Positions 14,605-47,505 of a DNA stretch of 64,000 bases are shown piece after piece. Positions within the stretch are counted from its first letter, which is position 1. Every line of letters begins with the position of its first letter. Both the position numbers and the translations under genes were made by a program. Location: positions 372,001-436,000 of the IMG/VR virus record IMGVR_UViG_3300028558_000016; one strand, given 5' to 3'. The notes beneath the pieces were generated by a model. The model ran no database searches. It was not told the origin of the DNA and saw nothing but the letters and a program-made list of their open reading frames with translations.

Positions 14605-14691
14605 GGGTAAGTTGCCGTAGTGGCCGAACGGTCCAGACTGTTAATCTGGTGAGAGCAATCTCCGTCGTGGGTTCGAATCCCACCTCGCCCT
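14605..14691 (+). tRNA. tRNA-Asn(GTT), long variable arm
   Basis: CCAGA-CTGTTAA-TCTGG; variable arm GAGAGCAATCTC. Confidence 0.8.
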
Positions 14692-14698
14692 CAACTTT

Positions 14699-15315: not shown

Positions 15316-15430
15316 GGGGAAGTAGCTCAGTTGGCAGAGCAATAGAAAAAAGCGTATTCTGCCCAAGAATATTTACAGCAACACAAAAGTAAATCTGTGT
15401 GCGGCCGTTCGAATCGGTCCTTCCCCACCA
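15316..15430 (+). ncRNA. tRNA scaffold with a large insert replacing the anticodon loop
   Basis: GGGGAAG/CTTCCCC+ACCA, intact D and T arms; insert contains GTATTCTG...GAATATTTACAGCAA. Confidence 0.7.
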
Positions 15431-15506: not shown

Positions 15507-15590
15507 TGTACAGTATGCAAATTGGCGAAGCGAACAGATTTTGGATCTGTTGGAGTAATCCCGCTGCAGGTTCGAGCCCTGCCTGTATAA
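15507..15590 (+). tRNA. tRNA-Gln(TTG), long variable arm
   Basis: ACAGA-TTTTGGA-TCTGT; TGTACAG/CTGTATA. Confidence 0.78.
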
Positions 15591-15604
15591 CTAAAATTAA
15601 AAAC

Positions 15605-21531: not shown

Positions 21532-21789
21532 ATGAAAGATGAAAGTAAAATAACAACTCAGCAATTCAAATTTATTTCTGAATTGCTTTGGGGTGGAGTT
21601 CCCGTTGACCGGGTACAAGCTGAAGAGTCTGCGATGTTCAAAGCGAACGCGCCAAAAATATTAGAGGAATATCCTCTATTGGATAAATCATTTTTTGAAA
21701 AACATAGTAAAAACAAAGGTTATGAAATTGTCAAAAGTAAAAATATACAAGATGAACAAGGTAGGCAAGGAGAAATTGTCGACGGCTGA
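21532..21789 (+). CDS. hypothetical protein
   Basis: ORF track. Confidence 0.5.
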   Translation: MKDESKITTQQFKFISELLWGGVPVDRVQAEESAMFKANAPKILEEYPLLDKSFFEKHSKNKGYEIVKSKNIQDEQGRQGEIVDG

Positions 21790-22852
21790 TTTATTGGAAA
21801 GAACCGGCTACATAAAACAAGTCTCATCTGGATTGTTCGTTCAGATGCACTTTATGAAGTTGGTGATGAATAACATCGAAAAGATCGTTAGAGAAGAACT
21901 AAACAAAATAAGCGCCTTGGAAATTGGATTGAACCAGTTACAAGGCGCTGAAGTTTGGAAGCAAACCGGTCGCTATAATGATTATGGCGCTGAGATGTTC
22001 AAGCTCAAGGATCGTTCAGATAAGGAGATGGTGTTCACAGGAACAAACGAAGAACTCGTGACTGTTGTTGCAAGAGAATATGTGGAGTCATATAGAGATT
22101 TGTCTTTCACATTCTATCAGATAAACAATAAGTTCAGAGATGAAATTCGCTGTAACACAGGTCTGATTAGATGTAAAGAGTTTCTCATGATGGATGCATA
22201 TTCATTTCATGTTAACAAAGAAGATCTCGAAATTAGATATAATGAAATAAGAAATTGTTATATTGCCATATTCGATCGACTCAAACTGAAATACAGAATT
22301 GAAACTGCAGATTCAGGAGAGATTGGCGGATCTGTTTCAGAGGAATTCATAGTTGAAACAAGTGATGGAGATATTGAGATAGGACACATTTTCCAATTAG
22401 ACACAAAATACTCGTCCAAGCTTGAAGCACAATTCATAGATGAAAAAGGCGAAAAGCAGGACATAGTGATGGGATGTTATGGAATAGGAATTTCTCGATT
22501 GGCCCAGGTTCTTGCAGACATTAACAGAGATGGAAATAATCTCAATTGGTCAAGAGAACTTGCAGCATACAGTCATGCAATCATTGTGGCAGATGTGAGG
22601 AACGAAGAACAAATGAGGATTGCTGAAAAGATATACGATGAATTGAAAAGAAAAAAGAAGAACGTATATCTCGATGACAGAAATCTTCGTGTTGGCGAAA
22701 AGCTTACCGAAGCTGACATCCTTGGTTCTGCGAATAAAATTTTAATAGGTAAAAATATAAGTGAAAATAATTTTGAGGTGAAGAAAAATTCAAACGATGC
22801 ATGGGAAAAAATGTCCATGGAAAGCTTGGATTACTTCTTGGAACTTCAGTAA
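21722..22852 (+). CDS. proS: prolyl-tRNA synthetase lacking the INS editing domain
   Basis: WKQTGRY, TNEE, KFRDEIR, EFLMMDAYSF, EIGHIFQL, MGCYGIGISR, anticodon-binding domain. Confidence 0.93.
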   Translation: MKLSKVKIYKMNKVGKEKLSTADLLERTGYIKQVSSGLFVQMHFMKLVMNNIEKIVREELNKISALEIGLNQLQGAEVWKQTGRYNDYGAEMFKLKDRSDKEMVFTGTNEELVTVVAREYVESYRDLSFTFYQINNKFRDEIRCNTGLIRCKEFLMMDAYSFHVNKEDLEIRYNEIRNCYIAIFDRLKLKYRIETADSGEIGGSVSEEFIVETSDGDIEIGHIFQLDTKYSSKLEAQFIDEKGEKQDIVMGCYGIGISRLAQVLADINRDGNNLNWSRELAAYSHAIIVADVRNEEQMRIAEKIYDELKRKKKNVYLDDRNLRVGEKLTEADILGSANKILIGKNISENNFEVKKNSNDAWEKMSMESLDYFLELQ

Positions 22853-22864
22853 AAAGTAGAAATA

Positions 22865-23404
22865 ATGAAAGCAGTTTATATTGGCGAATACGTCAAAGAA
22901 AAAATGTTCGATAGGTTATTGAACGAAGTGGCCTGGGCCAATAAGGAAGCTCCAAGAGACGAATGCTTTATGGCATTGGAATCTTTGGAATATACTTATG
23001 GAAAAGGATTCACAAGAACGTACACTTCTTTAGAAATGCACGTTGAAGTGTTGGGCATCATGAAAAAGATGAACGACGAAATGGGAACCGAGTATAACGT
23101 TTGCTTCTTGAATTATTACAAGAGCGAAAAAGAACACTTAGGTTGGCATGCAGATGATTCTCCTGAAATGGATGAGACACACCCAATAGGTGTTGTATCA
23201 TTTGGAGCTGAGAGATACATTTGGACGAAAAATAAGGACTACAGGGGAAACATTCCTGATGAAGATAAGTATTTATTAGGGGATGGTTCTTTGTTTATCA
23301 TGCCTGCAGGTTTCCAAAAGGATAACTTGCACAAGATACCAAAGAATGACAAACCTTGTGGAGGAAGAATTAGTTTAACATTTAGAAAATTCATAAACAA
23401 ATGA
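22865..23404 (+). CDS. AlkB-family 2OG-Fe(II) dioxygenase
   Basis: NYY...GWHADD...H.IPK...RISLTFR. Confidence 0.9.
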   Translation: MKAVYIGEYVKEKMFDRLLNEVAWANKEAPRDECFMALESLEYTYGKGFTRTYTSLEMHVEVLGIMKKMNDEMGTEYNVCFLNYYKSEKEHLGWHADDSPEMDETHPIGVVSFGAERYIWTKNKDYRGNIPDEDKYLLGDGSLFIMPAGFQKDNLHKIPKNDKPCGGRISLTFRKFINK

Positions 23405-24045
23405 GAAGATTTAAAATAAAACAAACAGAAGACCAGCGGGTCTATTACACGTCGGACACCCATTATGCGCACGCGAATATGTGTCGCGGAGTTTCGCAAT
23501 GGGGCGACCTGGATAACAGCACGAGGAACTTCAAAACTCTAATAGAGATGAACAACGAACTTGTGAATGCGATCAATAGAACCGTTAGGCCCAAAGACAT
23601 ACTCTTCCATTGTGGAGACTGGTCGTTTGGAAACGTGAGCAACGTTGCGGAGTTCAGGAGAAGAATACATTGCGAGAATGTGCACATCATATACGGAAAC
23701 CATGATGATCACATAGAAGACGATGAGACCCTACATGGGCATTTCTCTTCTGTACAACATTACAAGGAATTGGCAATCGATGGAGATATGCTTTGCTTGT
23801 TTCACTACAAGCAGACTATATGGAATAAAAGTCATCGTGATGCTTATCACTTGTATGGTCACTCGCACGCAGGTGCTGAACACATGGTTAACGGAAGATC
23901 CATGGATGTTGGAGTTGACAACGCTTACAAGTTGCTTGGAGAATACAGACCTTTTTCTCACGAGGAAGTTTTGTACTTCTTGAAAGGAAGAAAACAGAAA
24001 GCCATAGATCACCATGGCGCTAAAGGTACTGAGTCACACAAATGA
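23401..24045 (+). CDS. calcineurin-like metallophosphoesterase
   Basis: SDTH, GD, GNHD, GHSH. Confidence 0.9.
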   Translation: MRRFKIKQTEDQRVYYTSDTHYAHANMCRGVSQWGDLDNSTRNFKTLIEMNNELVNAINRTVRPKDILFHCGDWSFGNVSNVAEFRRRIHCENVHIIYGNHDDHIEDDETLHGHFSSVQHYKELAIDGDMLCLFHYKQTIWNKSHRDAYHLYGHSHAGAEHMVNGRSMDVGVDNAYKLLGEYRPFSHEEVLYFLKGRKQKAIDHHGAKGTESHK

Positions 24046-24665
24046 AACAGTATCCGTCCATATCCCATTATGATGATTCGATGATCGGAACACCGATGCT
24101 CGCATTCAACAAGATTGACGGAAGCAATCTGCGGTTTGAGTGGAGCAAGAAGAAGGGATGGAATAAATTCGGAACAAGAAGAACCATACTAAATGAAAAA
24201 GATCCACTCTACATCGGAGTGGATCTTTTCTTATATAAATATGCTAACAAGCTTGAGGAGATATTCAAGGACGATAAAGATTTCAGAGGAATAAGAGAAG
24301 TTGTTGTATTCTGTGAGTTCTTTGGGCCAAACAGCTTTTATGGACAGCATGATTTCATTGACATGGATGTCGTCTTGTTGGACGTCAATCCAATGACAAA
24401 GGGATTCATAAATCCAAGAGAGTTCGTAAAGAAGTTTGGAAAGCTTGGAATTCCTGAAATAGTTTTTGACGGAATATTAACGGCTGAGATGGTTGATGAG
24501 ATCAGAAATTCTGATTTAAAAGAAGGTGTGGTGTGCAAGTGGAACAACAACAGACATCTGCATACGGCAAAGATCAAAACTTATAAATGGCTCAATGAAT
24601 TAAAAGCAAGATATGGGCAGGAAGCATTGGACGAAGAATTTGGAAACATTAAATTAATATCATGA
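24042..24665 (+). CDS. RNA ligase-like nucleotidyltransferase
   Basis: KIDGSN motif I, EFFG, EGVV, KIK. Confidence 0.75.
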   Translation: MKQYPSISHYDDSMIGTPMLAFNKIDGSNLRFEWSKKKGWNKFGTRRTILNEKDPLYIGVDLFLYKYANKLEEIFKDDKDFRGIREVVVFCEFFGPNSFYGQHDFIDMDVVLLDVNPMTKGFINPREFVKKFGKLGIPEIVFDGILTAEMVDEIRNSDLKEGVVCKWNNNRHLHTAKIKTYKWLNELKARYGQEALDEEFGNIKLIS

Positions 24666-25836: not shown

Positions 25837-26577
25837 ATGAGAGTCTTCATTCCAAAAGGTAAAAATGGTTTATTCATTTCTAATGAAATAATAACGGAAT
25901 GCACCTATGCAGCATTCTTTGGTTTTTCCACAATGGGATGGGAAGTGGAATTTTACGAAGGAGATCCTCCAACAGGTTTATCAAGAGATGACGTTGTCAT
26001 CGGTTGGATAACAGGAGTTAAGATGGCAGTTAAGAATTTAGGAATTGAACCTCCAACGGAAATAGATTATCCCGAAGAACTCAATGAATACCTTGGAAGA
26101 AAAATATGGCAGAGCAATCTCCATAAAGTTTATACAGATGATTCAATGTGGCCAGTGTTCGTTAAACCTGTAAAAGGAAAACAATTTGATGGAAAACTTG
26201 TAACAAGCCTAAAGGATTTAGTTGGCCTTGGTTCACAGGAAGACCGAAAGATTTGGTGTTCTGAACCTATTAAGTTTATTTCCGAGTGGAGATGCTTTGT
26301 ACGATATGGAAAAATGATCGACAGCAAAAACTACAAAGGTGATTTTAAAGTTCAACCAAACTTTCACATTATTGAAGCTTGCATAAAAGATTACGTTAGC
26401 CAGCCGGTAGCATTCACCATAGATTTTGGAGTTACCGATGATGGAAAAACTCTATTAATAGAAGTAAATGATGGTTATGCTTTCGGTACTTATGGATTAT
26501 CTCCATTAAACACTGCAAAAATGCTATCTGCTCGTTGGAGTGAGATGGTAGGAATTCCTGACCCTTGTCAATTTTAA
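25837..26577 (+). CDS. ATP-grasp domain protein (DUF4343/R2K-like)
   Basis: FVKP, SEWRCFV, IDFG, LIEVNDG. Confidence 0.8.
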   Translation: MRVFIPKGKNGLFISNEIITECTYAAFFGFSTMGWEVEFYEGDPPTGLSRDDVVIGWITGVKMAVKNLGIEPPTEIDYPEELNEYLGRKIWQSNLHKVYTDDSMWPVFVKPVKGKQFDGKLVTSLKDLVGLGSQEDRKIWCSEPIKFISEWRCFVRYGKMIDSKNYKGDFKVQPNFHIIEACIKDYVSQPVAFTIDFGVTDDGKTLLIEVNDGYAFGTYGLSPLNTAKMLSARWSEMVGIPDPCQF

Positions 26578-29028: not shown

Positions 29029-29441
29029 AGAACAAGACATTAATAAAATACGCGAGAACCCTTTTGAAAGAATTGCTTGCTAAATGCTCTGAGCCGCAAC
29101 AGTTGTTATTTAAGAGAATGTACAATCATAAGAATTTGGAAGCGCCAATCAATGAAGCAGTTGATCAGATGGAACCCGATAAACTGGATTGGGCTGTGAC
29201 TCAGGTAGAAGAAACGATTAAAAAGAACAATAGATTTTTAACTTGCAAAAAAGATTTGTTTAAATCAACATACCAATCTAATGCTTTCATAGATGGAAAA
29301 ATATATGAAGTTTCCTTTGATAAGAACTACGAGGAAAATGAAAATGAAATTTGGATAAAAGATGAAACAGGCAGACCGTTCACATTCACGAAAGTAAATT
29401 CATTTGGAATGTATAAAGTCGAAGATTATTTTGAATTATGA
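29025..29441 (+). CDS. hypothetical protein
   Basis: ORF track. Confidence 0.6.
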   Translation: MKNKTLIKYARTLLKELLAKCSEPQQLLFKRMYNHKNLEAPINEAVDQMEPDKLDWAVTQVEETIKKNNRFLTCKKDLFKSTYQSNAFIDGKIYEVSFDKNYEENENEIWIKDETGRPFTFTKVNSFGMYKVEDYFEL

Positions 29442-30844
29442 GTTACGATAAATACATATCAACAACACTTCCATACGCGAACTCTGTTCCGCACATGGGT
29501 CATGCTCTTGAACTAATTCAAGGGGATGCGCTCAAGCATTTTTTCGAATCTATAAAGAATGAAAAAGTATTCTTCAATATAGGTGTTGACGAACATGGAT
29601 TAAAGGTCTATACAAAGGCACAAGAACTTGGAATTGACACCAAGCTTTATTTGAATGAACTGACGCATAAATGGCAGGACTTTTGTAAGTTGTTCCAAAT
29701 TGATTATGACAACTTCTATAGAACAACGAGTCTTGTTCACATAGCAAGAACCCAAAGATTTTGGACTAAGTGTCTCGAGAGAGGAGATCTTTACAAGAAG
29801 AAGTATTCTGGAAAATATTGCGCTGGATGTGAATCATTTAAAACTGAAGCAGATCTCGTAGATGGAAAATGCCCAGACCATAATATCGAACCCTCTATAA
29901 TAGAAGAAGAGAATTGGTTCTTTAGAATTTCTAAGCATAAAGGATTATTATATGGATGGTTGAAGAGCAATCCTGATTTTTTATCGCCAAGGTCTAAAAC
30001 TTCCGAACTTGAAAACATAATACTTCAATCTGAAGATATTTCAGTTTCTCGTTTAAAGGTAAATGTTCCATGGGGAGTTGGAGTTCCAAATGATGAAGAT
30101 CAAGTCATTTATGTTTGGTTTGAAGCTCTTCTTAATTATATCTTCGCTGTGGATGATTTTAATGATCAATACTTCATACAAATATGTGGTCCAGACAATT
30201 TAAGATTTCAGGGATCATTATTCCAAAATATTTTGATTTCTGCAAATATTCCAAACACCAAGAAATTATTGGTTCATGGAACTGTTCTCGATGCCGAAGG
30301 TAAAAAGATGTCCAAGTCACTTGGTAACGTGGTTGATCCAATTGATCAATTAAACAAATATGGATTGGATGCTGTAAGATATTACACGCTTGCAGGTTTA
30401 TCCACCTATGGTGATGGAGCGTGGTCTGAAAAGGATTTAATAAAAACCTACAATTCTGAATTGGCAGATACTTATGGAAATTTATTGGCAAGGGTTCTTC
30501 ATTTGATAGACACCAAGAATGTTGATGTAATTCCACCAACAGCAGAACATAAGAGACACGTTGATTCAATAGTGTATTCAGTTCACACCAATTGGGAATT
30601 CTATGAAATCCAAAAAGCAATAAAGGAAACTGGCTGGATAATCAATTTCGGAAATAAGTACATGAATGATGAAAAACCGTGGGAAAAAGATAAAGATTAC
30701 GTGCAAATTCTAAGCAATCTGTACTATTCTTTATGTGAAGCAAATAAGTTATATTTACCTGTTTTATCATCTAAAACGTGGTCACTGATAGAAGAAGCAT
30801 TGAAGATAAAAAAGAAAGTAATAATATTTCAGAAAATAGTATAA
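29438..30844 (+). CDS. metG: methionyl-tRNA synthetase
   Basis: TTLPYANSVPHMGH, GVDEHG, YVWFEALLNY, KMSKSLGN. Confidence 0.95.
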   Translation: MSYDKYISTTLPYANSVPHMGHALELIQGDALKHFFESIKNEKVFFNIGVDEHGLKVYTKAQELGIDTKLYLNELTHKWQDFCKLFQIDYDNFYRTTSLVHIARTQRFWTKCLERGDLYKKKYSGKYCAGCESFKTEADLVDGKCPDHNIEPSIIEEENWFFRISKHKGLLYGWLKSNPDFLSPRSKTSELENIILQSEDISVSRLKVNVPWGVGVPNDEDQVIYVWFEALLNYIFAVDDFNDQYFIQICGPDNLRFQGSLFQNILISANIPNTKKLLVHGTVLDAEGKKMSKSLGNVVDPIDQLNKYGLDAVRYYTLAGLSTYGDGAWSEKDLIKTYNSELADTYGNLLARVLHLIDTKNVDVIPPTAEHKRHVDSIVYSVHTNWEFYEIQKAIKETGWIINFGNKYMNDEKPWEKDKDYVQILSNLYYSLCEANKLYLPVLSSKTWSLIEEALKIKKKVIIFQKIV

Positions 30845-40284: not shown

Positions 40285-40889
40285 CTCTCGAAGAAGCCAT
40301 AAAATCTGCAGACTCTCGTTCGAGGAACATGAACCTTCATTGGTTTGTGTGTGAGTGGAATGATGGTTACATCATCCATTCTTCCTCGCACATGATAAGA
40401 TTTCCTGACACAAAGTATGTGTGGAGTACAGGAGAACTTCAATCGTGGAAGGTGATTTACGATGAGGAAGAAAGAAAATTTAAACATGTTGTAAAGAAAT
40501 TAAAAATGGAAAAAGAAGAAGCTTTAGAAATAGCAAAACAATTCATCGACGGAGAAAAATTGTTCATGCAAATGTCAAACGCAGTTCCTGCTATAATAAC
40601 CCACAGAGGAAAGCAATTGCTTGGATCTGTTTCAAGCATAATTCCAGCGGATCCTGAGATTGTGTTATGCGCACATACCAGCTTTCCAGTTGGACAGGAG
40701 ATCATAGATGCCGTAAAAGAAATATCTCCAGACAGATTGTTGTTATCGATAGACGATGAACTCGATTTGGCGCCTCGTCAGGATGTTATGAGATTGGTTG
40801 GAACTAATCTAACGAAGATGACTCCGTCCCAAACTAAAGTGGCGCAAGAGGAATTAAAAGGAAAAGACATCATTGAGATCAATGGCTGA
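40281..40889 (+). CDS. hypothetical protein
   Basis: ORF track. Confidence 0.55.
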   Translation: MTLEEAIKSADSRSRNMNLHWFVCEWNDGYIIHSSSHMIRFPDTKYVWSTGELQSWKVIYDEEERKFKHVVKKLKMEKEEALEIAKQFIDGEKLFMQMSNAVPAIITHRGKQLLGSVSSIIPADPEIVLCAHTSFPVGQEIIDAVKEISPDRLLLSIDDELDLAPRQDVMRLVGTNLTKMTPSQTKVAQEELKGKDIIEING

Positions 40890-41121
40890 TTATTACTGTG
40901 ATAATAAAAGACATCTTGTTTGCATTCCATATTCAGTGGAGAATTTACATGAGATGGCAAAGGATCTTGAAATAAAAAAATGTTGGTATTCAATCAAGCC
41001 TTGGCCGCATTACGATATTCCATTAAGACGAATTGATGAGATACAAAGTAAATGCAATGTTGTTAATTTCAGAGACATAGTCAACATTAAAAGAGGCACT
41101 TTTAAAAATGAGAATAAATGA
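40882..41121 (+). CDS. DUF4031-like small protein
   Basis: HL...LHEMA..L...W...PHYDI. Confidence 0.6.
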   Translation: MADYYCDNKRHLVCIPYSVENLHEMAKDLEIKKCWYSIKPWPHYDIPLRRIDEIQSKCNVVNFRDIVNIKRGTFKNENK

Positions 41122-41542
41122 AGGTGACATATTAGTATGCAAGCCTGGATATTGGGGACATGAAGATAATCCAGCAAAATCAGATAATGTAAGACCAAAA
41201 GAAAATCCAACTTATGGTGGAGCAGGGTACATAGATGGATTAATGCAAAAAGCATCATCAAGCTATAATGGTGAAGATCCATTTGATCTTCACGTTTTTT
41301 GGAAATTTCACAATGAAGCTGGAGTATTTTCAAGAGCTGTAAGACTTGCAAACGAAGAAGAAAAGAAAGCGTATAAAGAAGGAATAAGAAATGCTAAAGA
41401 TATTCAACGAACAACTTTCAAAATATCATACGTTTCCATTGATGGTGAAAACAAGAATGTTGAAGTAGAAGCTTTTTATGAAACTGCCGCAGTAAGCTCC
41501 ATAAAAGATTTAAAACGAGTCAATTATGTCATTTCTGGTTAA
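41108..41542 (+). CDS. hypothetical protein with shared C-terminal F.I.Y module
   Basis: FKISYVSIDGENKNVEVEA...IKDLKRVNY. Confidence 0.6.
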   Translation: MRINEGDILVCKPGYWGHEDNPAKSDNVRPKENPTYGGAGYIDGLMQKASSSYNGEDPFDLHVFWKFHNEAGVFSRAVRLANEEEKKAYKEGIRNAKDIQRTTFKISYVSIDGENKNVEVEAFYETAAVSSIKDLKRVNYVISG

Positions 41543-41551
41543 TAGAGAAAA

Positions 41552-41631
41552 TAAATTTTTTAGTTTCAGAAATAGTTCCTATATTTGCAGATATAAACAT
41601 TGAAACAATTTTAAAAAGAAAAGGTATATAG
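41552..41631 (+). promoter_or_regulatory. conserved operon promoter block
   Basis: TTTTTTAGTTTCAGAAATAGTTCCTATATTTG...GAAACAA...GGTATATAG. Confidence 0.65.
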
Positions 41632-41638
41632 TTTAGAA

Positions 41639-41745
41639 GATTGCTTACAGCAAAACAAAATGGTTAAAGAATCACCGAAAGGTGGTTTTTTCGGTTCGAT
41701 CCCGAAGCTCTGAGATTACATCAATGAGTTTTAAGGCAATCTGAA
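41639..41745 (+). ncRNA. CAGCA-motif element enclosing a tRNA-like core, copy C
   Basis: GATTGC-TTACAGCAAAACAAA...TGGTTAAAG...GGTTCGATCCC...GCAATC-TGAA. Confidence 0.55.
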
Positions 41746-41914: not shown

Positions 41915-41997
41915 ACGTCGGTGTCCGAGCGGTCAAAGGTAGCGGTCTCCAAAACCGCGGAGTTTCTCCATCGTGGGTTCGAATCCTACCCGGCGTG
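41915..41997 (+). tRNA. tRNA-Trp(CCA), long variable arm
   Basis: GCGGT-CTCCAAA-ACCGC; G73; GGAGTTTCTCC arm. Confidence 0.88.
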
Positions 41998-42018
41998 CAA
42001 AAATTAAAAGAAGAAAAC

Positions 42019-42373: not shown

Positions 42374-42463
42374 GGTGCAGGTATCCAAGGGGTTGAAGGG
42401 ACCAGGCTGTGGACCTGGTTGAAGCGAAAGCTGAACACGCGAGTTCGAATCTCGTCTTGCACC
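42374..42463 (+). tRNA. tRNA-His(GTG), long variable arm
   Basis: G-1:C73; CCAGG-CTGTGGA-CCTGG; AGCGAAAGCT arm. Confidence 0.85.
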
Positions 42464-42468
42464 CACAT

Positions 42469-42552: not shown

Positions 42553-43185
42553 ATGATGAAAGAGTTAAAGTTAGATAGCACGTACAAAGGAACGAGAATT
42601 CTTGTAGGAAACGAGAAGCGTGGAATGATCAATGACATGGTCATGATTTTATTGAATCAAGGCTTCACTGAGATTTCCATTCCGATCATTCAGTTGCAAG
42701 AAACATTTGCAGGAAAGGTTGGAGAAGAAAATAACAATCTAATGTTCAATTTTAAAGATCGTGGAGAAAGGAATGTTTGCTTGGCTCCTGAATACACAGC
42801 AGTGATTCAACAATTGGCAAAGACGAAATACAAACAAGAAAAGGACGTAAAGCTTTTCTATGTGCAAGAATGTTTTAGAGGAGAAAAGCCTCAAGCAGGA
42901 AGATACAGACAGTTTACTCAATTTGGAGTTGAAATTTTAAATCCAAAGAAAGAAACTATGGAAGGATTAAAAGAATTAGCCGTCAGCCTTTTGTCCGGTT
43001 ATGATTTCAAATTCAACGTCAACAGTGATGTGACGAGAGGTTTGGATTATTACAAGGACGGAAAAGGATTTGAGATCACATGCGATGAGCTTGGATCAAG
43101 CAAACAGATTTGTGGTGGAGGTTCTTATGAAGGTGGAATGGGTTTTGCAATTGGAATTGATAGGATATTAAAAACACAGTCATGA
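42553..43185 (+). CDS. hisS: minimal histidyl-tRNA synthetase (catalytic core only)
   Basis: LAPEYTA, FRGEKPQAGRYRQFTQFGVE, RGLDYY, GGGSY, GFAIGIDRI. Confidence 0.9.
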   Translation: MMKELKLDSTYKGTRILVGNEKRGMINDMVMILLNQGFTEISIPIIQLQETFAGKVGEENNNLMFNFKDRGERNVCLAPEYTAVIQQLAKTKYKQEKDVKLFYVQECFRGEKPQAGRYRQFTQFGVEILNPKKETMEGLKELAVSLLSGYDFKFNVNSDVTRGLDYYKDGKGFEITCDELGSSKQICGGGSYEGGMGFAIGIDRILKTQS

Positions 43186-43913
43186 AATATTTAGTAGGAA
43201 TACAGCCAACAGGAAAGATCCATATTGGAAACTATATGGGTTGCTTAGCAAAGGGGTTGAGATACCAGGAGCAGGGACACGAAGTAACGTTTCTCATTGC
43301 CAACTATCACAGCATGACGACAGACTCATACTCTGATGTGACTGAGAAGGAATTGAGAATGCTTGGATGCAAGAACATTGTGCACCAGACTCCGGCTTAC
43401 ACTGAATTGTTCTTCAAGCTTTGTTGCAAGATGAACCTTGGAGTTTTGCAGAAGATGCCTCAGTACAAGGATAAAAAGGAAAGTGTTGATTTCGATATGG
43501 GGATTCTTTTATATCCAGTTCTAATGGCAGCAGACATCATCATGAATGATCCTGATGTTGTGTTGGTTGGAAGAGACCAGGTTCCACACATGGAATTGAC
43601 GAACGATATTGCAAAAAGAGTTGGAGTAACAAAGAGGTTTGAATACGAGCTTGGGGATGTTGAAAAGGTGATGTCGTTAATTGATCCAACAATGAAGATG
43701 TCAAAGTCATCTGGCGAAGCTCACGTGCTTTACCTATTTGACGAGGATTACAGTAACAAATTGAAAAGAGCAAACATGAACGGAGAAGGACTCATTAATA
43801 TACAAAAGATAGGAGACTTCTTTGGAATAGAAAGAAACGATATGAATTCCATATACAAAGAAAATATAGCAATAAAACTGTCATCGGTGTTCGGCACCGT
43901 CCCGGTGACTTAA
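43182..43913 (+). CDS. trpS: compact tryptophanyl-tRNA synthetase
   Basis: GIQPTGKIHIGNY, YPVLMAADI, VGRDQ, KMSKS. Confidence 0.93.
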   Translation: MKYLVGIQPTGKIHIGNYMGCLAKGLRYQEQGHEVTFLIANYHSMTTDSYSDVTEKELRMLGCKNIVHQTPAYTELFFKLCCKMNLGVLQKMPQYKDKKESVDFDMGILLYPVLMAADIIMNDPDVVLVGRDQVPHMELTNDIAKRVGVTKRFEYELGDVEKVMSLIDPTMKMSKSSGEAHVLYLFDEDYSNKLKRANMNGEGLINIQKIGDFFGIERNDMNSIYKENIAIKLSSVFGTVPVT

Positions 43914-43935
43914 ATAAAACCGGTGCCGTCCAAAT

Positions 43936-44020
43936 GGGCGTGTACCGGTGGAATCTTATACATTCTATACCCGTAGTCTGGTCGTTGAAAACGGGGGTTC
44001 AAATCCCTCCACGCCTACCA
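43936..44020 (+). ncRNA. D-arm-less rearranged tRNA-like RNA, anticodon TAT (Ile)
   Basis: GGGCGTG/CACGCCT+ACCA; GGAAT-CTTATAC-ATTCT directly after the acceptor strand. Confidence 0.6.
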
Positions 44021-45281: not shown

Positions 45282-45345
45282 AAGTTTTAAGGATTTAGAA
45301 AACTATGAATGGAATAAGCCCAGGACGAAAGTTCTGGGCTTTTTT
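45257..45345 (+). terminator. attenuator: antiterminator and intrinsic terminator
   Basis: CCTGGGT(45257-63) can pair GCCCAGG(45318-24) of AAGCCCAGGAC-GAAA-GTTCTGGGCTT-TTTT. Confidence 0.85.
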
Positions 45346-45395
45346 CATTTTAAAAATATCGAAAATGAAATGGTTTAAGAAATTACAGGAAATAA

Positions 45396-45479
45396 CGGCA
45401 CGTACTCAGACCATCCTGATAAGATGGATAACTTGTAGCGGTGTTGCAAACGTGGGTTCAAATCCCTCCGTGCCGACCA
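45396..45479 (+). ncRNA. D-arm-less rearranged tRNA-like RNA, anticodon GAT (Ile)
   Basis: CGGCACG/CGTGCCG+ACCA; CCATC-CTGATAA-GATGG 8 nt after the acceptor strand. Confidence 0.65.
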
Positions 45480-45760
45480 TGAAAAATATGTTGTATAAAA
45501 CCGCAAGAAGGTCGTTGTCAAAAAAGACAAACAGACATTTGAGACAAACCACGTTTCTCTACGAGATGTGTGGAAATGATTTTCAAAAGCTGTTAAAGGT
45601 GGAAGAGAGATTGAAAAATTATTTTCTCTTTTATTGTCCAGGCGATCCTGAAGAAGTGGAAAAAGTTTTGGCATTGCCTGAAAAATTTTTATTGAACGAT
45701 AAGAAGTGGCAAGATGGATCAAAATATTTTTGCTTAGAAGAATTTTACGACGGAATGTAG
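45479..45760 (+). CDS. hypothetical protein
   Basis: MKNMLYKT...; stop TAG lies inside the next tRNA. Confidence 0.55.
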   Translation: MKNMLYKTARRSLSKKTNRHLRQTTFLYEMCGNDFQKLLKVEERLKNYFLFYCPGDPEEVEKVLALPEKFLLNDKKWQDGSKYFCLEEFYDGM

Positions 45761-45824
45761 CTCAGTTGGTTAGAGCACCCGCCTGATACGCGGTAGGTCG
45801 GCAGTTCGAATCTGCCCATTCCGA
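45751..45824 (+). tRNA. tRNA-Ile(GAT)
   Basis: CCGC-CTGATAC-GCGG; CGGAATG/CATTCCG. Confidence 0.9.
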
Positions 45825-45827
45825 CAG

Positions 45828-45973
45828 ATGTCCTTAGCTCAGTGGTTAGAGTATTATGCTGATAAAAGGTTTTAGATCTTGTAATGGAAAAATATCACGG
45901 CTCATAACCGTGGTACCAAAACAAAAATTTAAAATGCACATAAGGGTCGGTGGTTCGAATCCATCAGGACATG
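45828..45973 (+). tRNA. tRNA (GAT) with about 73-nt insert carrying a nested CAT anticodon arm
   Basis: ATGTCCT/AGGACAT; TTATG-CTGATA[insert with CACGG-CTCATAA-CCGTG]A-CATAA. Confidence 0.65.
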
Positions 45974-45982
45974 CATAAAAAT

Positions 45983-46056
45983 GCCCGCGTAGCTCAACTG
46001 GATAGAGCACCTGACTACGGATCAGGAGGTTTAGAGTTCGAATCTCTACGTGGGTA
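45983..46056 (+). tRNA. tRNA-Arg(ACG)
   Basis: CCTGA-CTACGGA-TCAGG. Confidence 0.92.
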
Positions 46057-46060
46057 CATT

Positions 46061-46134
46061 GGTTTTGTAGCTCAATTGGATAGAGCAATTCCGTCCTAAG
46101 GAAAAGGTTATAGGTTCGAGTCCTATCAAGATCA
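46061..46134 (+). tRNA. tRNA-Arg(CCT)
   Basis: TTCC-GTCCTAA-GGAA. Confidence 0.85.
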
Positions 46135-46139
46135 CAAAT

Positions 46140-46212
46140 GCCTGCGTAGCTCAGTGGACAGAGCGCCGGTCTTCGGAACCGGGCGTCGGGAGTTCGAATC
46201 TCTCCGTGGGTA
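46140..46212 (+). tRNA. tRNA-Arg(TCG)
   Basis: CCGGT-CTTCGGA-ACCGG. Confidence 0.9.
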
Positions 46213-46236
46213 CTGAAGTAAAATGGAATTAAATAT

Positions 46237-46326
46237 GCCCGTGTAGCCGAGGAAGTTTTCTAAACTTTTATCCGTAATTGGAGCTGCGTCTCACGACTAA
46301 TGGGGGTTCGAATCCCTCCACGGGTA
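46237..46326 (+). ncRNA. D-arm-less rearranged tRNA-like RNA, anticodon TCT (Arg)
   Basis: GCCCGTG/CACGGGT; GAAGT-TTTCTAA-ACTTT right after the acceptor strand. Confidence 0.62.
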
Positions 46327-46341
46327 CTTAAAATTAAAGTT

Positions 46342-47505
46342 ATGAAAATTGATATTGATAAAATAAAACAGATCCCCAAAGAGATTTCGGAAGAATTTGG
46401 GATGTGCGTCTATGGACCAATCTCAGATGAGATTAAGGCATGGATGGAATTCCATGGTATGCAATCGCAAAACATGGGAAATTATACAAACATCTATACA
46501 GATAAAAACATTATTGATCTGTTCAATAAACCAGAACCATTTGAATACATCGATGGGTTCAGTCCAAACCTAAACAAGAATCTTCACATTGGACACTTCT
46601 CAAATTTAGTTCTTGCAAAGGCTTTCGTCTCTCTTGGAATAGCAAAGAAGACTGTGGCAATATTGGGAGACACGTTAGAAGGGGATGTTTCAAAGGAAGA
46701 TGCGTTGAACAACTACAATGAGATATGTGAGAAATTCTCATACCCCGTAGATAAGATGTTCATGGCTTCTGAAATGGAATCTGATTACAACCTCGTGGAT
46801 GGTGTTCATGAATATGAAGGAACCAAAGTGTTCTATCTTGATACGCCATTAGTTGGAATCAAAAGCGATGGGTCAACAACATATTTCTATCAGGACGTTG
46901 CATTGGCACAAAAATTAAATGCTCCAACATTATATCTTACAGGAAGCGAACAGAACGGACATTTCAACAGCTTAAAGGAAATGTTTCCTAAAATAAAGCA
47001 CATTGGACTTGGACTTGTAAAAGCAAAAGGAGGAAAGATGTCAAGCAGACTCGGAAATGTTATTTGGATGCAAGATGTCATCGATGAAATGATGAGCAAC
47101 TTTCAAGACGAAAAAGTGTGCTATAATGTTTTTGCAGGATTTATTTTGAAATCAACTCCTAAGTCTGAAAAGAACATAGACATATATCAATTGGACAATC
47201 CATTGAATTCACCTGGATTGTACTTAAGCTATACGTTAGCAAAACTAAAAAGCGCTGGAGTGAAATGTGAAGGAAAAACATTCACCTCTCAAGATCTTCA
47301 ATTCAAATACATGAAGGCCTTGAACTCTCTTTCTCCAAATATTTTGCTTGAAGGTTTAATTGATCATGCAAAGAAGATAAGCGGTTTATACATCACTCAC
47401 AAGATAAAAGATAATGCGGTGAACCAGTCCATGTTTGAAATATTGGGTTCAGATTTATTATTAGGAATGAGCCTCCTGGGTTTATTTGATGTTGACAAGG
47501 TTTAA
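46342..47505 (+). CDS. argS: compact arginyl-tRNA synthetase
   Basis: FSPNLNKNLHIGH, KSDGSTTYFYQDVA, EQNGHF, KMSSRLGN, YLSYTLAK. Confidence 0.9.
   Translation: MKIDIDKIKQIPKEISEEFGMCVYGPISDEIKAWMEFHGMQSQNMGNYTNIYTDKNIIDLFNKPEPFEYIDGFSPNLNKNLHIGHFSNLVLAKAFVSLGIAKKTVAILGDTLEGDVSKEDALNNYNEICEKFSYPVDKMFMASEMESDYNLVDGVHEYEGTKVFYLDTPLVGIKSDGSTTYFYQDVALAQKLNAPTLYLTGSEQNGHFNSLKEMFPKIKHIGLGLVKAKGGKMSSRLGNVIWMQDVIDEMMSNFQDEKVCYNVFAGFILKSTPKSEKNIDIYQLDNPLNSPGLYLSYTLAKLKSAGVKCEGKTFTSQDLQFKYMKALNSLSPNILLEGLIDHAKKISGLYITHKIKDNAVNQSMFEILGSDLLLGMSLLGLFDVDKV

What the first reader, a model, noticed from the sequence alone, without database searches (positions are those of the whole stretch)
45828..45973. tRNA with a second anticodon arm nested inside its anticodon loop
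The outer arm TTATG-CTGATA..A-CATAA (Ile GAU) is interrupted at about position 37/38 by a roughly 73-nt hairpin capped with a perfect CACGG-CTCATAA-CCGTG (CAU) anticodon arm. It is too short for a group I intron. It could be an intron needing a nuclease plus ligase (an RNA ligase is at 24042) or a two-anticodon decoy.
Basis: partly seen in the sequence, partly recalled or inferred. Interest (0 to 1): 0.7.

Follow-up and report, generated by a model that had tools for sequence, protein, structure and literature searches.

The report
Phage tRNA-Ile gene with hairpin intron
A 482-kb soil phage carries a second, well-formed tRNA-Ile gene whose anticodon loop is split by a conserved 73-base hairpin tipped with a copy of a methionine-tRNA anticodon arm, a new example of the unexplained "introns" already reported in giant-phage tRNAs.

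Summary
Window 45828-45973 (+) matches the Rfam tRNA model at 48.7 bits, with a 73/74-nt insertion after position 37 of a CUGAUA|A (Ile-GAU) anticodon loop. The insert alone folds into one long hairpin (z -3.7) capped by CACGG-CUCAUAA-CCGUG.

It is real and under constraint:
- It occurs in five metagenome runs and in a related phage contig.
- In that relative, neighbouring third codon positions are 76% identical, but the insert is 70/73 identical.
- The exon changes fall only at variable tRNA positions.

Closer relatives by the ArgRS-like marker gene carry an insert-free tRNA-Ile(GAU) at the same place in the array. A distant relative has an unrelated 72-nt hairpin at the same site, without a CAU loop.

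It is not any of the following:
- an archaeal bulge-helix-bulge intron (no such motif; the phage has no EndA or RtcB);
- a group I intron or any other Rfam family;
- a repeat within the genome.

Giant-phage tRNA "introns" of unknown mechanism are already published (Lak megaphages, 2019; a jumbo-phage survey, 2026), so this is a new member of a known, unexplained kind.

My best reading, inferred and not shown, is a protein-spliced intron resealed by the phage RNA ligase. An unspliced tRNA-like decoy remains a serious rival.

The parts
45828..45864 (+). 5' exon of the interrupted tRNA-Ile(GAU): acceptor 5' strand, D arm, anticodon stem 5' strand UUAUG, and half-loop CUGAUA (tRNA positions 1-37).
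   Evidence: Rfam alignment; ARAGORN -i. U8, A14, G18G19 and the G15:C48 partner are present, read directly from the sequence.
45865..45937 (+). 73-nt intervening hairpin. Going outward to inward, the helices are 9, 4, 3 and 8 bp, and the loop is 7 nt.
   Evidence: Fold of the insert alone: z -3.74, 0/200 shuffles. It is 70/73 identical in L034, against 76% at third codon positions. There is no second copy in the genome.
45896..45912 (+). Nested anticodon-arm look-alike, CACGG-CUCAUAA-CCGUG.
   Evidence: Exact loop by chance about 1e-5. It differs by one flipped base pair from the arm of the phage's own initiator-like tRNA. It is identical to the arms of real tRNA(CAU) genes in Acidobacteria, SAR116 and other bacteria.
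45938..45973 (+). 3' exon: A38, anticodon stem 3' strand CAUAA, variable loop GGGUC, T arm, acceptor 3' strand and discriminator G.
   Evidence: Rfam alignment. The 21-nt T arm is identical to that of the initiator-like tRNA at G000 8552-8624.
45751..45825 (+). Ordinary, uninterrupted tRNA-Ile(GAU), 2 nt upstream of the interrupted copy.
   Evidence: ARAGORN; Rfam 70.4 bits; 100% identical in L034.
45396..45476 (+). Third Ile(GAU)-type tRNA-like. It has a perfect acceptor stem, a reduced D arm, the arm CCAUC-CUGAUAA-GAUGG, a 24-nt variable region and an encoded ACCA end.
   Evidence: Rfam tRNA 37.4 bits in the whole-genome search; sequence read. It lies downstream of a strong terminator at 45316-45341, so ORF 45305-45760 is probably not a gene.
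15316..15427 (+). Second insert-bearing tRNA in the window. The cloverleaf is perfect, but 47 nt stand where the 7-nt anticodon loop should be. It sits directly after tRNA-Tyr(GUA).
   Evidence: My own scanner; Rfam tRNA 46.0 bits, E 3e-9, with a 47-nt insertion.
24042..24665 (+). Candidate sealing enzyme: RNA ligase (nucleotidyltransferase domain only, 207 aa).
   Evidence: PF09414, E 1.3e-10; PHROG 548 'RNA ligase'. No PDB sequence relative. Its link to this tRNA is inferred only.
23401..24045 (+). Candidate end-healing enzyme: a metallophosphoesterase overlapping the start of the ligase gene.
   Evidence: PF12850; PHROG 547 'phosphoesterase', E 2e-37.
46300..47505 (+). Short ArgRS-like gene just downstream of the tRNA array. 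I used it as the marker to find related huge phages.
   Evidence: PF00750. 694 homologues on contigs up to 727 kb. 37 related IMG/VR loci.

Best explanation
**Shown.** This is a real, selectively maintained paralogue of tRNA-Ile(GAU) in a 482-kb rhizosphere phage. A 73-nt structured hairpin interrupts it between positions 37 and 38 of the anticodon loop.

**Inferred.**
- The hairpin is an intervening sequence. The pre-tRNA folds into a normal L-shape with the hairpin stacked on the anticodon stem.
- A protein endonuclease, not identified and either phage- or host-encoded, cuts in the single-stranded A-rich segments at the base of the hairpin.
- The two halves stay paired through the acceptor and anticodon stems. 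The phage's healing and sealing enzymes (phosphoesterase, P-loop kinase, RNA ligase) rejoin them into a 73-nt tRNA-Ile with the loop CUGAUAA.
- The nested CAU arm is not a second working anticodon. It is a captured or copied tRNA-Met/initiator anticodon arm, specific to this lineage, and may serve as a recognition handle.

The element belongs with the 'enigmatic introns' already described in megaphage tRNAs.
For: **It is a well-formed tRNA**
- Full-length tRNA model match with the insert at 37/38.
- Removing the insert restores a canonical 7-nt loop, and all tertiary-interaction nucleotides are present (sequence).

**It is under purifying selection against L034**
- The TrpRS-like gene is 90.4% identical, and 75.8% at third codon positions. 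The insert is 70/73 identical.
- The two substitutions in the distal stem keep pairing (G-C to G-U, U-G to U-A). The third lies in a bulge.
- The exon changes are one D-loop indel and one substitution at T-loop position 59.

**The outer Ile identity is the ancestral one**
- L107, L108 and L110 have an uninterrupted tRNA-Ile(GAU) at the array position occupied here by the interrupted copy, just before tRNA-Arg(ACG).
- The exons are closest to the interrupted tRNA-Ile of G029 (69%) and to the insert-free one of L110 (66%).
- G029 (ArgRS-like 48% identical) has a 72-nt hairpin after CUGAUA at the same site. It has a similar order of helices but no anticodon-like tip.

**Enzymes and precedent**
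- Ligase and phosphoesterase are adjacent at 23401-24665. P-loop AAA_33 kinases lie elsewhere in the genome.
- Conserved non-group-I tRNA introns are published for Lak megaphages (PMC6784885) and for jumbo phages generally (PMC13037316).
Against: - There is no RNA evidence of any kind. No RNA run was listed.
- No endonuclease was identified. The phage has no EndA, RtcB or RNase III, and no bulge-helix-bulge motif brackets the junctions.
- Passively removed protein-spliced introns usually evolve fast. This one is nearly as conserved as the exons, which suggests the insert RNA itself does something.
- An intact tRNA-Ile(GAU) sits 2 nt upstream, so the spliced product would be redundant.
- The discriminator is G. 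The other tRNA-Ile genes examined here have A.
- Another insert-bearing tRNA in the same window (15316-15427) would not give a canonical U33 loop after any simple excision.
- The homology between this insert and the G029 insert rests on position, length and helix order, not on sequence.
Confidence: 0.45

Rival explanations
1. The insert is never removed. The 146-nt RNA would be a stable tRNA-shaped molecule with a roughly 30-bp extended anticodon arm. That arm displays a tRNA-Met-type CAU loop at its tip and an Ile half-loop in an internal loop. It would act as a decoy, sponge or regulator for a tRNA-binding protein: an anticodon nuclease of a host defence system, MetRS, TilS or IleRS.
For: - The whole insert is almost as conserved as the exons.
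- The nested arm is letter-for-letter a natural tRNA(CAU) arm, found for example in soil Acidobacteria. It is one flipped pair away from the phage's own initiator-like arm.
- The genome makes many other aberrant tRNA-likes that may not decode: D-armless Ile and Arg forms, and a 47-nt 'loop' tRNA.
- An intact isoacceptor lies next door.
- No splicing endonuclease was found.
- The phage encodes a MetRS-like protein at window 29438-30844.
Against: - The anticodon-like tip is absent from the same-site insert in G029, while CUGAUA is kept.
- In L034 one of the two G-C pairs next to the loop is already G-U.
- An extended anticodon arm has no known binding partner.
- The only binding test attempted (MetRS-like protein plus insert RNA) was not folded by the tool and gives no evidence either way.
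Confidence: 0.28
2. It is a decaying duplicate. Under this view a redundant tRNA-Ile copy was hit by an illegitimate recombination or insertion that brought in part of a tRNA-Met/initiator gene, and it has no function. Its apparent conservation would reflect recent shared ancestry or gene conversion within tRNA arrays.
For: - It is redundant with the upstream copy.
- It looks chimeric: the T arm is identical to the initiator-like tRNA and the nested arm resembles it.
- Its distribution is patchy. It is absent at the syntenic position in relatives whose ArgRS-like gene is 62-71% identical.
- The discriminator G is unusual.
- The interrupted gene shows 5 differences over 147 nt, whereas the three orthologous neighbour tRNAs compared (tRNA-Ile(GAU), Arg-ACG, Arg-UCG) are 100% identical; tRNA-Arg(CCU) is only 57% identical, apparently replaced.
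Against: - With 24% divergence at third codon positions, about 17 changes are expected in 73 nt. Three are seen, two of them pair-preserving.
- The exon changes avoid all conserved tRNA positions.
- The short spacers flanking the gene differ by several indels and substitutions, while the insert does not.
- A same-site insert of the same length is kept in a distant lineage.
Confidence: 0.12
3. It is excised by general bacterial RNA-processing enzymes, or by the RNA itself, rather than by a dedicated splicing endonuclease. One route would be RNase P/RNase Z-type or RNase E/III-type cuts that leave 3'-OH and 5'-phosphate ends, which an ATP-dependent ligase can seal directly. Another would be a new small self-cleaving motif.
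For: - Published megaphage tRNA introns often contain tRNA-like parts (PMC6784885; PMC13037316). One relative here has a T-arm-like hairpin inside its insert (L055). This would suit excision by tRNA end-processing enzymes.
- The ligase is of the ATP-dependent type, which needs 3'-OH and 5'-phosphate ends.
- High insert conservation fits an RNA with its own activity or a precise recognition shape.
Against: - This insert has an anticodon-arm look-alike only, with no acceptor/T-arm mimic.
- No known ribozyme family matches, even at E <= 1.
- RNase III cuts would not give exact junctions, and the phage has no RNase III.
Confidence: 0.1

Closest known systems
'Enigmatic' tRNA introns of Lak megaphages (Devoto et al. 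2019, PMC6784885) and intronic sequences in jumbo-phage tRNAs (PMC13037316, 2026)
   Same: - A huge phage genome.
- A tRNA gene much longer than expected, because of a tens-to-100-nt insertion in the anticodon loop right after the anticodon (for example Lak tRNA-Tyr, intron 37-129).
- Not group I.
- The insert sequence is almost invariant among related phages.
- The insert contains part of another tRNA.
- The mechanism is unknown.
   Different: - The phage clade and habitat differ: rhizosphere or soil, 36% GC.
- This genome is essentially standard-coded. The 2026 survey reported its introns in alternatively coded phages.
- The isotype here is Ile(GAU).
- Only an anticodon arm is nested, not a whole tRNA or T arm.
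Archaeal/eukaryal protein-spliced tRNA introns (bulge-helix-bulge motif; EndA/Sen endonuclease plus RtcB or Trl1 ligase)
   Same: Canonical 37/38 position, short length, a hairpin that stacks on the anticodon stem, and a need for an endonuclease plus a ligase.
   Different: - No bulge-helix-bulge motif brackets the junctions.
- The phage has no EndA or RtcB.
- The tRNA set looks bacterial: the initiator-like tRNA has a 1-72 mismatch.
- The insert sequence is strongly conserved.
Bacterial group I introns in tRNA anticodon loops (tRNA-Leu UAA, tRNA-fMet, Azoarcus tRNA-Ile CAU)
   Same: An intron inside the anticodon loop of a bacterial-type tRNA gene, with patchy, mobile-like distribution.
   Different: By established knowledge, those introns are about 200 nt or longer with a P3-P9 ribozyme core. 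This insert is a 73-nt simple hairpin with no match to the Rfam group I model.
T4 anticodon-loop break-and-repair (PrrC nuclease; Pnkp plus Rnl1)
   Same: A phage-encoded healing and sealing set that rejoins tRNA halves broken in the anticodon loop. This phage has a phosphoesterase, a P-loop kinase and an RNA ligase.
   Different: The T4 system repairs a single host-inflicted cut and removes nothing. Here two cuts and the loss of 73 nt would be needed. The ligase has only an Rnl2-like nucleotidyltransferase domain (207 aa).
Anticodon-arm mimicry in regulatory RNAs (E. coli thrS operator binding ThrRS)
   Same: A hairpin that copies a tRNA anticodon arm outside a decoding context.
   Different: The thrS operator is an mRNA leader with proven synthetase binding. 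Here the mimic sits inside a tRNA gene and no binding has been tested.

Membership tests
tRNA (Rfam RF00005) | Full cloverleaf match above the curated score | tested here: met
   48.7 bits against a gathering score of 29, model positions 1-71, with the insertion in the anticodon loop. ARAGORN -i calls Ile(GAU).
Megaphage-type 'enigmatic' tRNA introns (Devoto 2019) | Encoded by a huge phage, with a non-group-I insertion of tens to about 100 nt directly after the anticodon | tested here: met
   The virus record is 482,156 bp. The 73-nt insert lies at 37/38. No group I match.
Megaphage-type 'enigmatic' tRNA introns (Devoto 2019) | Insert sequence nearly invariant among related phages, and insert-free alleles exist | tested here: met
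   The insert is 70/73 identical in L034, against 75.8% at third codon positions. It shows 0-1 change across five runs. Insert-free genes occupy the same position in L107, L108 and L110.
Megaphage-type 'enigmatic' tRNA introns (Devoto 2019) | Removed from the RNA (true intron) | not testable with these tools
   No RNA run was listed. As far as the papers read here say, this was not shown for Lak phages either.
Archaeal-type BHB tRNA intron | Bulge-helix-bulge motif (3-nt bulge, 4-bp helix, 3-nt bulge) bracketing both splice sites | tested here: not met
   An exhaustive script found none at the junctions in this tRNA, the G029 one or the second genomic one. A positive control was found.
Archaeal-type BHB tRNA intron | Splicing endonuclease EndA (PF01974) and RtcB ligase (PF01139) available | tested here: not met
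   Neither is present in the phage genome at E <= 1. The host is unknown, so host enzymes cannot be excluded.
Group I intron | Conserved ribozyme core, length about 200 nt or more | tested here: not met
   The insert is 73 nt. There is no RF00028 or other ribozyme match in the window at gathering score, nor in 45700-46400 at E <= 1.
RNase III-excised intervening sequence (rRNA IVS type) | A long, near-perfect double-stranded stem as the RNase III substrate, with fragments left unligated | tested here: inconclusive
   The stem has 24 bp in four helices broken by bulges. There is no phage RNase III. Host RNase III and the actual cleavage were not testable.
Bacterial Y RNA-like (YrlA, RF02553) | Match to the family model | tested here: not met
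   21.8 bits against a gathering score of 69. The match rests on the T arm plus the next tRNA.
Miniature mobile repeat (MITE/REP-like) | Multiple copies in the genome | tested here: not met
   The only other match in the 482-kb genome is the 21-nt T arm. A structured pattern scan of the metagenome collection found only the phage's own contig plus one chance hit.

The most novel reading that the evidence does not exclude
The hairpin would be a working mimic of the anticodon arm of a methionine-type tRNA, either the host's elongator tRNA-Met or the initiator. It would be displayed on a tRNA scaffold, or released as a 73-nt RNA after excision. It would titrate or misdirect a CAU-specific factor, such as a host anticodon nuclease used in anti-phage defence, MetRS or TilS. 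One gene would then yield both a tRNA-Ile and an anti-defence or regulatory RNA, through a bacterial or phage splicing route that does not use any known tRNA-splicing endonuclease.
Probability: 0.12. Interest if true: 0.8.

Novelty: new member of a known kind. Interest (0 to 1): 0.55.

Why it matters
Short, non-self-splicing introns in bacterial-type tRNA genes have no known removal pathway. Their repeated appearance in giant phages has been noted since 2019 but never explained.

This locus is a compact case that could be tested directly:
- The insert is 73 nt, the exons look fully functional, and there is clear purifying selection.
- Natural insert-free relatives exist for comparison.
- A phage ligase/phosphoesterase pair is available to test.

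If the insert is spliced, that would reveal a new tRNA-splicing route in bacteria or phages. If it is not, giant phages are making structured tRNA decoys.

The surrounding genome adds to the picture. It carries long-variable-arm versions of normally short tRNAs, D-armless tRNA-likes and truncated synthetase genes next to their cognate tRNAs. This suggests a wider remodelling of tRNA architecture in this phage clade.

Tried and rejected
**Searches for relatives that led nowhere**
- An exact 16-mer from the 5' exon, scanned in IMG/VR, gave 31 hits, all chance matches in coding DNA.
- A single-protein search for close relatives of the ArgRS-like gene in IMG/VR found none. An alignment-based search was needed.
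- A structured pattern (CTGATAA..GGCTCATAAC..GGTTCGA) found nothing in IMG/VR. In the metagenome collection it found only the phage's own contig and one chance hit in an unrelated tRNA array.
- The pattern CTGATA..RGGTCGGTRGTTCGA found only the G029 case again. The other hits were pairs of adjacent tRNAs.
- A whole-record Rfam tRNA search of 18 relatives was cut off at the best 150 rows, so the lower-scoring insert-bearing genes were not listed.

**Data that could not be obtained**
- No RNA sequencing run was listed.
- DNA contigs showed no insert-free allele. The 'joints' reported there come from unrelated tRNAs of other organisms.
- The complex prediction of the MetRS-like protein with the insert RNA was not folded by the tool and gives no evidence.

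**Ideas considered and rejected**
- Group I reading with a U at -1 and a terminal G: the shifted junctions would put C at position 37, and 73 nt cannot hold the core.
- Eukaryote-style anticodon-intron pair: C32-G109 is possible only with a 2-nt bulge, so it is not convincing.
- A shared AUGGAA motif occurs in three inserts (this one, the second genomic one, and G029 twice) but is absent from the other inserts. I treat it as a lead only.
- ARAGORN's 1271-nt 'intron' in a tRNA-Gly at window 40350-41714 has a poor acceptor stem and is probably false.
- Several ARAGORN intron calls in relatives at odd positions look like forced fits.

Full report
**What is in the sequence.** Window 45828-45973 (+) is a complete tRNA cloverleaf interrupted in its anticodon loop.
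- Rfam's tRNA model matches it end to end at 48.7 bits (gathering score 29). A 74-nt stretch is skipped after CUGAUA.
- ARAGORN with intron search calls tRNA-Ile(GAU) with a 73-nt intron at 37/38.
- The junction can slide by one A without changing the joined product, whose loop is CUGAUAA.
- The exons carry the usual tertiary-interaction nucleotides: U8, A14, G18G19, G15:C48, G46, G53:C61 and the T-loop UUCGAAU (sequence).
- The insert on its own folds into one hairpin of four helices (9, 4, 3 and 8 bp). The MFE structure is 50% of the ensemble, z is -3.74, and no shuffle out of 200 folds as well.
- The tip is CACGG-CUCAUAA-CCGUG at 45896-45912. In 200,000 shuffles, an anticodon-like hairpin arose in 0.44% and this exact loop in 0.001%.

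**Where it sits.**
- The window is bases 372001-436000 of a 482,156-bp IMG/VR virus record from a rhizosphere metagenome.
- The phage encodes about 60 tRNAs covering all 20 amino acids. They are grouped next to short synthetase-like genes for the same amino acids:
  - ProRS 21695-22852
  - MetRS-like 29438-30844
  - HisRS-like 42553-43185
  - TrpRS-like 43182-43913
  - ArgRS-like 46300-47505
- The local array runs: ordinary tRNA-Ile(GAU) 45751-45825, the interrupted copy 2 nt later, then tRNA-Arg ACG, CCU and UCG, and a D-armless Arg(UCU)-like RNA.
- A strong terminator at 45316-45341 closes the upstream operon, so ORF 45305-45760 is probably spurious.
- Reading TAG as sense adds little open reading frame, so the genome is essentially standard-coded despite three tRNA-CUA genes.

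**It is real and constrained.**
- Contigs from five sequencing runs span the insert with 0-1 change, and no insert-free allele was seen.
- A contig from a related phage, L034 (ArgRS-like 92% identical), has the same gene.
- Between the two phages the coding genes are 87-91% identical, and the TrpRS-like gene is 75.8% identical at third codon positions. The insert is 70/73 identical.
- Two of the three insert changes lie in the distal stem and keep pairing (G-C to G-U, U-G to U-A). The third is in a bulge.
- The exon changes are one D-loop indel and T-loop position 59, both variable positions.
- The short flanking spacers differ more than the insert does.

A neutral relic is therefore unlikely.

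**Comparative picture.** The ArgRS-like protein has 694 homologues on huge-phage contigs.
- Three relatives, L107, L108 and L110 (ArgRS-like 71, 64 and 62% identical), have an uninterrupted tRNA-Ile(GAU) at the array position occupied here by the interrupted copy, just before tRNA-Arg(ACG).
- I built a covariance model of the interrupted gene and searched 37 related IMG/VR records. One clear parallel came up in G029 (ArgRS-like 48% identical). It is a tRNA-Ile(GAU) with a 72-nt hairpin after CUGAUA: the same site, nearly the same length and a similar order of helices. Its sequence is unrelated and its tip is a 5-nt loop, not anticodon-like.
- Its exons are the closest to ours (69%), followed by the insert-free L110 gene (66%).
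- The outer Ile identity is thus ancestral. The insert is patchily distributed, and the nested CAU arm is specific to this lineage.

**Not an isolated oddity.**
- The same genome holds two more tRNAs with structured inserts in place of the anticodon loop. One is window 15316-15427 (47 nt; Rfam 46 bits). The other is G000 7775-7880(-) (33 nt with a GAAA-capped hairpin; Rfam 51.3 bits).
- Relatives carry others, including one with a T-arm-like hairpin inside the insert (L055) and a conserved ~165-nt insert.

**What it is not.**
- No bulge-helix-bulge motif brackets the junctions, and the control motif was detected.
- The phage has no EndA, RtcB or RNase III.
- No group I or other ribozyme family matches, even at E <= 1.
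- The insert is single-copy in the genome.
- Pattern scans found it in no other record of the metagenome collection.

**The nested arm.**
- It differs by one flipped base pair from the arm of the phage's own initiator-like tRNA (CAGGG-CUCAUAA-CCCUG). That tRNA also shares its 21-nt T arm with the interrupted gene.
- The exact 17-mer is the anticodon arm of genuine tRNA(CAU) genes in many bacteria. These include probable elongator tRNA-Met of soil Acidobacteria and SAR116 alphaproteobacteria.
- The arm therefore derives from, or mimics, a real methionine-type anticodon arm. It is not a chance hairpin.

**Prior knowledge.**
- Devoto et al. 2019 (PMC6784885) reported tRNAs with 'enigmatic', highly conserved introns in Lak megaphages. 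Examples are tRNA-Tyr with an intron at 37-129 and a tRNA-Thr whose intron may encode a tRNA. They stated that introns in phage tRNAs had not been reported before.
- A 2026 survey (PMC13037316) found intronic sequences in tRNAs of 262 alternatively coded jumbo phages and noted that they 'could encode another tRNA'.
- I found no paper giving a mechanism.

**Mechanism.** Three things are shown: a real, selected tRNA-Ile paralogue with a structured insert at 37/38; insert-free genes at the same position in relatives; and healing and sealing enzymes in the genome (phosphoesterase 23401-24045, RNA ligase 24042-24665, AAA_33 kinases).

The rest is inferred. I think the insert is cut out by an unidentified protein endonuclease and the halves are resealed by the phage ligase. 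I give this 0.45.
- *For it:* the canonical site, the intact exons, and CUGAUA kept in two distant interrupted genes.
- *Against it:* no endonuclease or recognisable motif, unusually high insert conservation, redundancy with the neighbouring copy, and a G discriminator.

The rivals are:
- an unspliced tRNA-shaped decoy or regulator (0.28);
- a decaying chimeric duplicate (0.12);
- excision by general RNases or by the RNA itself (0.10).

**Limits.** There are no RNA data. Only two sequence-related copies of this particular insert exist, so covariation cannot be tested. The homology with the G029 insert is not proven, and the host is unknown.

Noticed in passing
window 14605-14692, 15507-15591, 41915-41998, 42375-42464; G000 5778-5869, 6974-7059, 7373-7464, 124757-124843: tRNAs for Asn, Gln, Trp, His, Met, Lys and Glu occur in versions of 84-92 nt, most with a base-paired extra (variable) arm in ARAGORN's drawings, although these are normally short class I tRNAs. 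Most sit next to a normal-length copy with the same anticodon. The only tRNA-Trp in the genome is of the long type.
   Followed up: partly
window 46237-46326 and 45396-45476: These are tRNA-like genes with a reduced or absent D arm and a 24-30-nt variable region. They carry normal-looking anticodon arms, UCU (Arg) and GAU (Ile). The Ile one has an encoded ACCA end.
   Followed up: partly
window 43850-44020: A partial match to the 3' domain of tmRNA (19.2 bits, E 3.8e-6, below the gathering score) ends in a T arm and ACCA, and the Rfam tRNA model also matches 43936-44017 at 33.8 bits. ARAGORN finds no tmRNA there. It could be a phage tmRNA-like gene or another tRNA-like RNA.
   Followed up: no
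window 21695-22852, 29438-30844, 42553-43185, 43182-43913, 46300-47505: Short synthetase-like genes (ProRS, MetRS, HisRS, TrpRS/TyrRS and ArgRS families, several clearly truncated) each sit beside tRNAs for the same amino acid, except the MetRS-like gene. The ~390-aa ArgRS-like protein has about 700 homologues on huge-phage contigs.
   Followed up: partly
window 2278-2351; G000 358020-358092, 368276-368349: The genome has three tRNAs with anticodon CUA (amber suppressor type). Even so, reading TAG as sense barely lengthens its open reading frames, so it does not look TAG-recoded.
   Followed up: partly
L034:3905-4137 and L132 (G029 record), the tRNA-like that begins CCTCTGA: A conserved structured insert of about 165 nt sits inside a tRNA-like scaffold. 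It is shared by two phages that are only distantly related, and in L034 it lies between the two tRNA-Ile genes. No Rfam family matches it at gathering score.
   Followed up: partly
L116:3870-4165 (G003, 675-kb phage): A tRNA-Leu(UAA) carries a 208-nt insert within the anticodon, the classical site of the cyanobacterial group I intron. No Rfam group I match reached the gathering score.
   Followed up: no
L132 (G029), the tRNA-like that begins CCTCGCG: A tRNA with the arm CCAUC-CUAAUAC-GAUGG (anticodon AAU) carries about 100 extra nt between the anticodon arm and the T arm.
   Followed up: no
L090:1479-1573 (-): A tRNA(CAU) gene carries a 22-nt tandem duplication of its D-arm segment (GTAGCTCAAGTGGTTAGAGC twice).
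   Followed up: no
window 22865-23404 and 25837-26577: An AlkB-like 2OG-Fe(II) oxygenase and an R2K-clade ATP-grasp protein flank the phosphoesterase/RNA-ligase pair. Together they may form an RNA repair or modification cluster.
   Followed up: no
window 40350-41714: ARAGORN calls a tRNA-Gly(UCC) with a 1271-nt intron here. The acceptor stem has two mismatches and the 'intron' holds ORFs, so the call is probably false.
   Followed up: no
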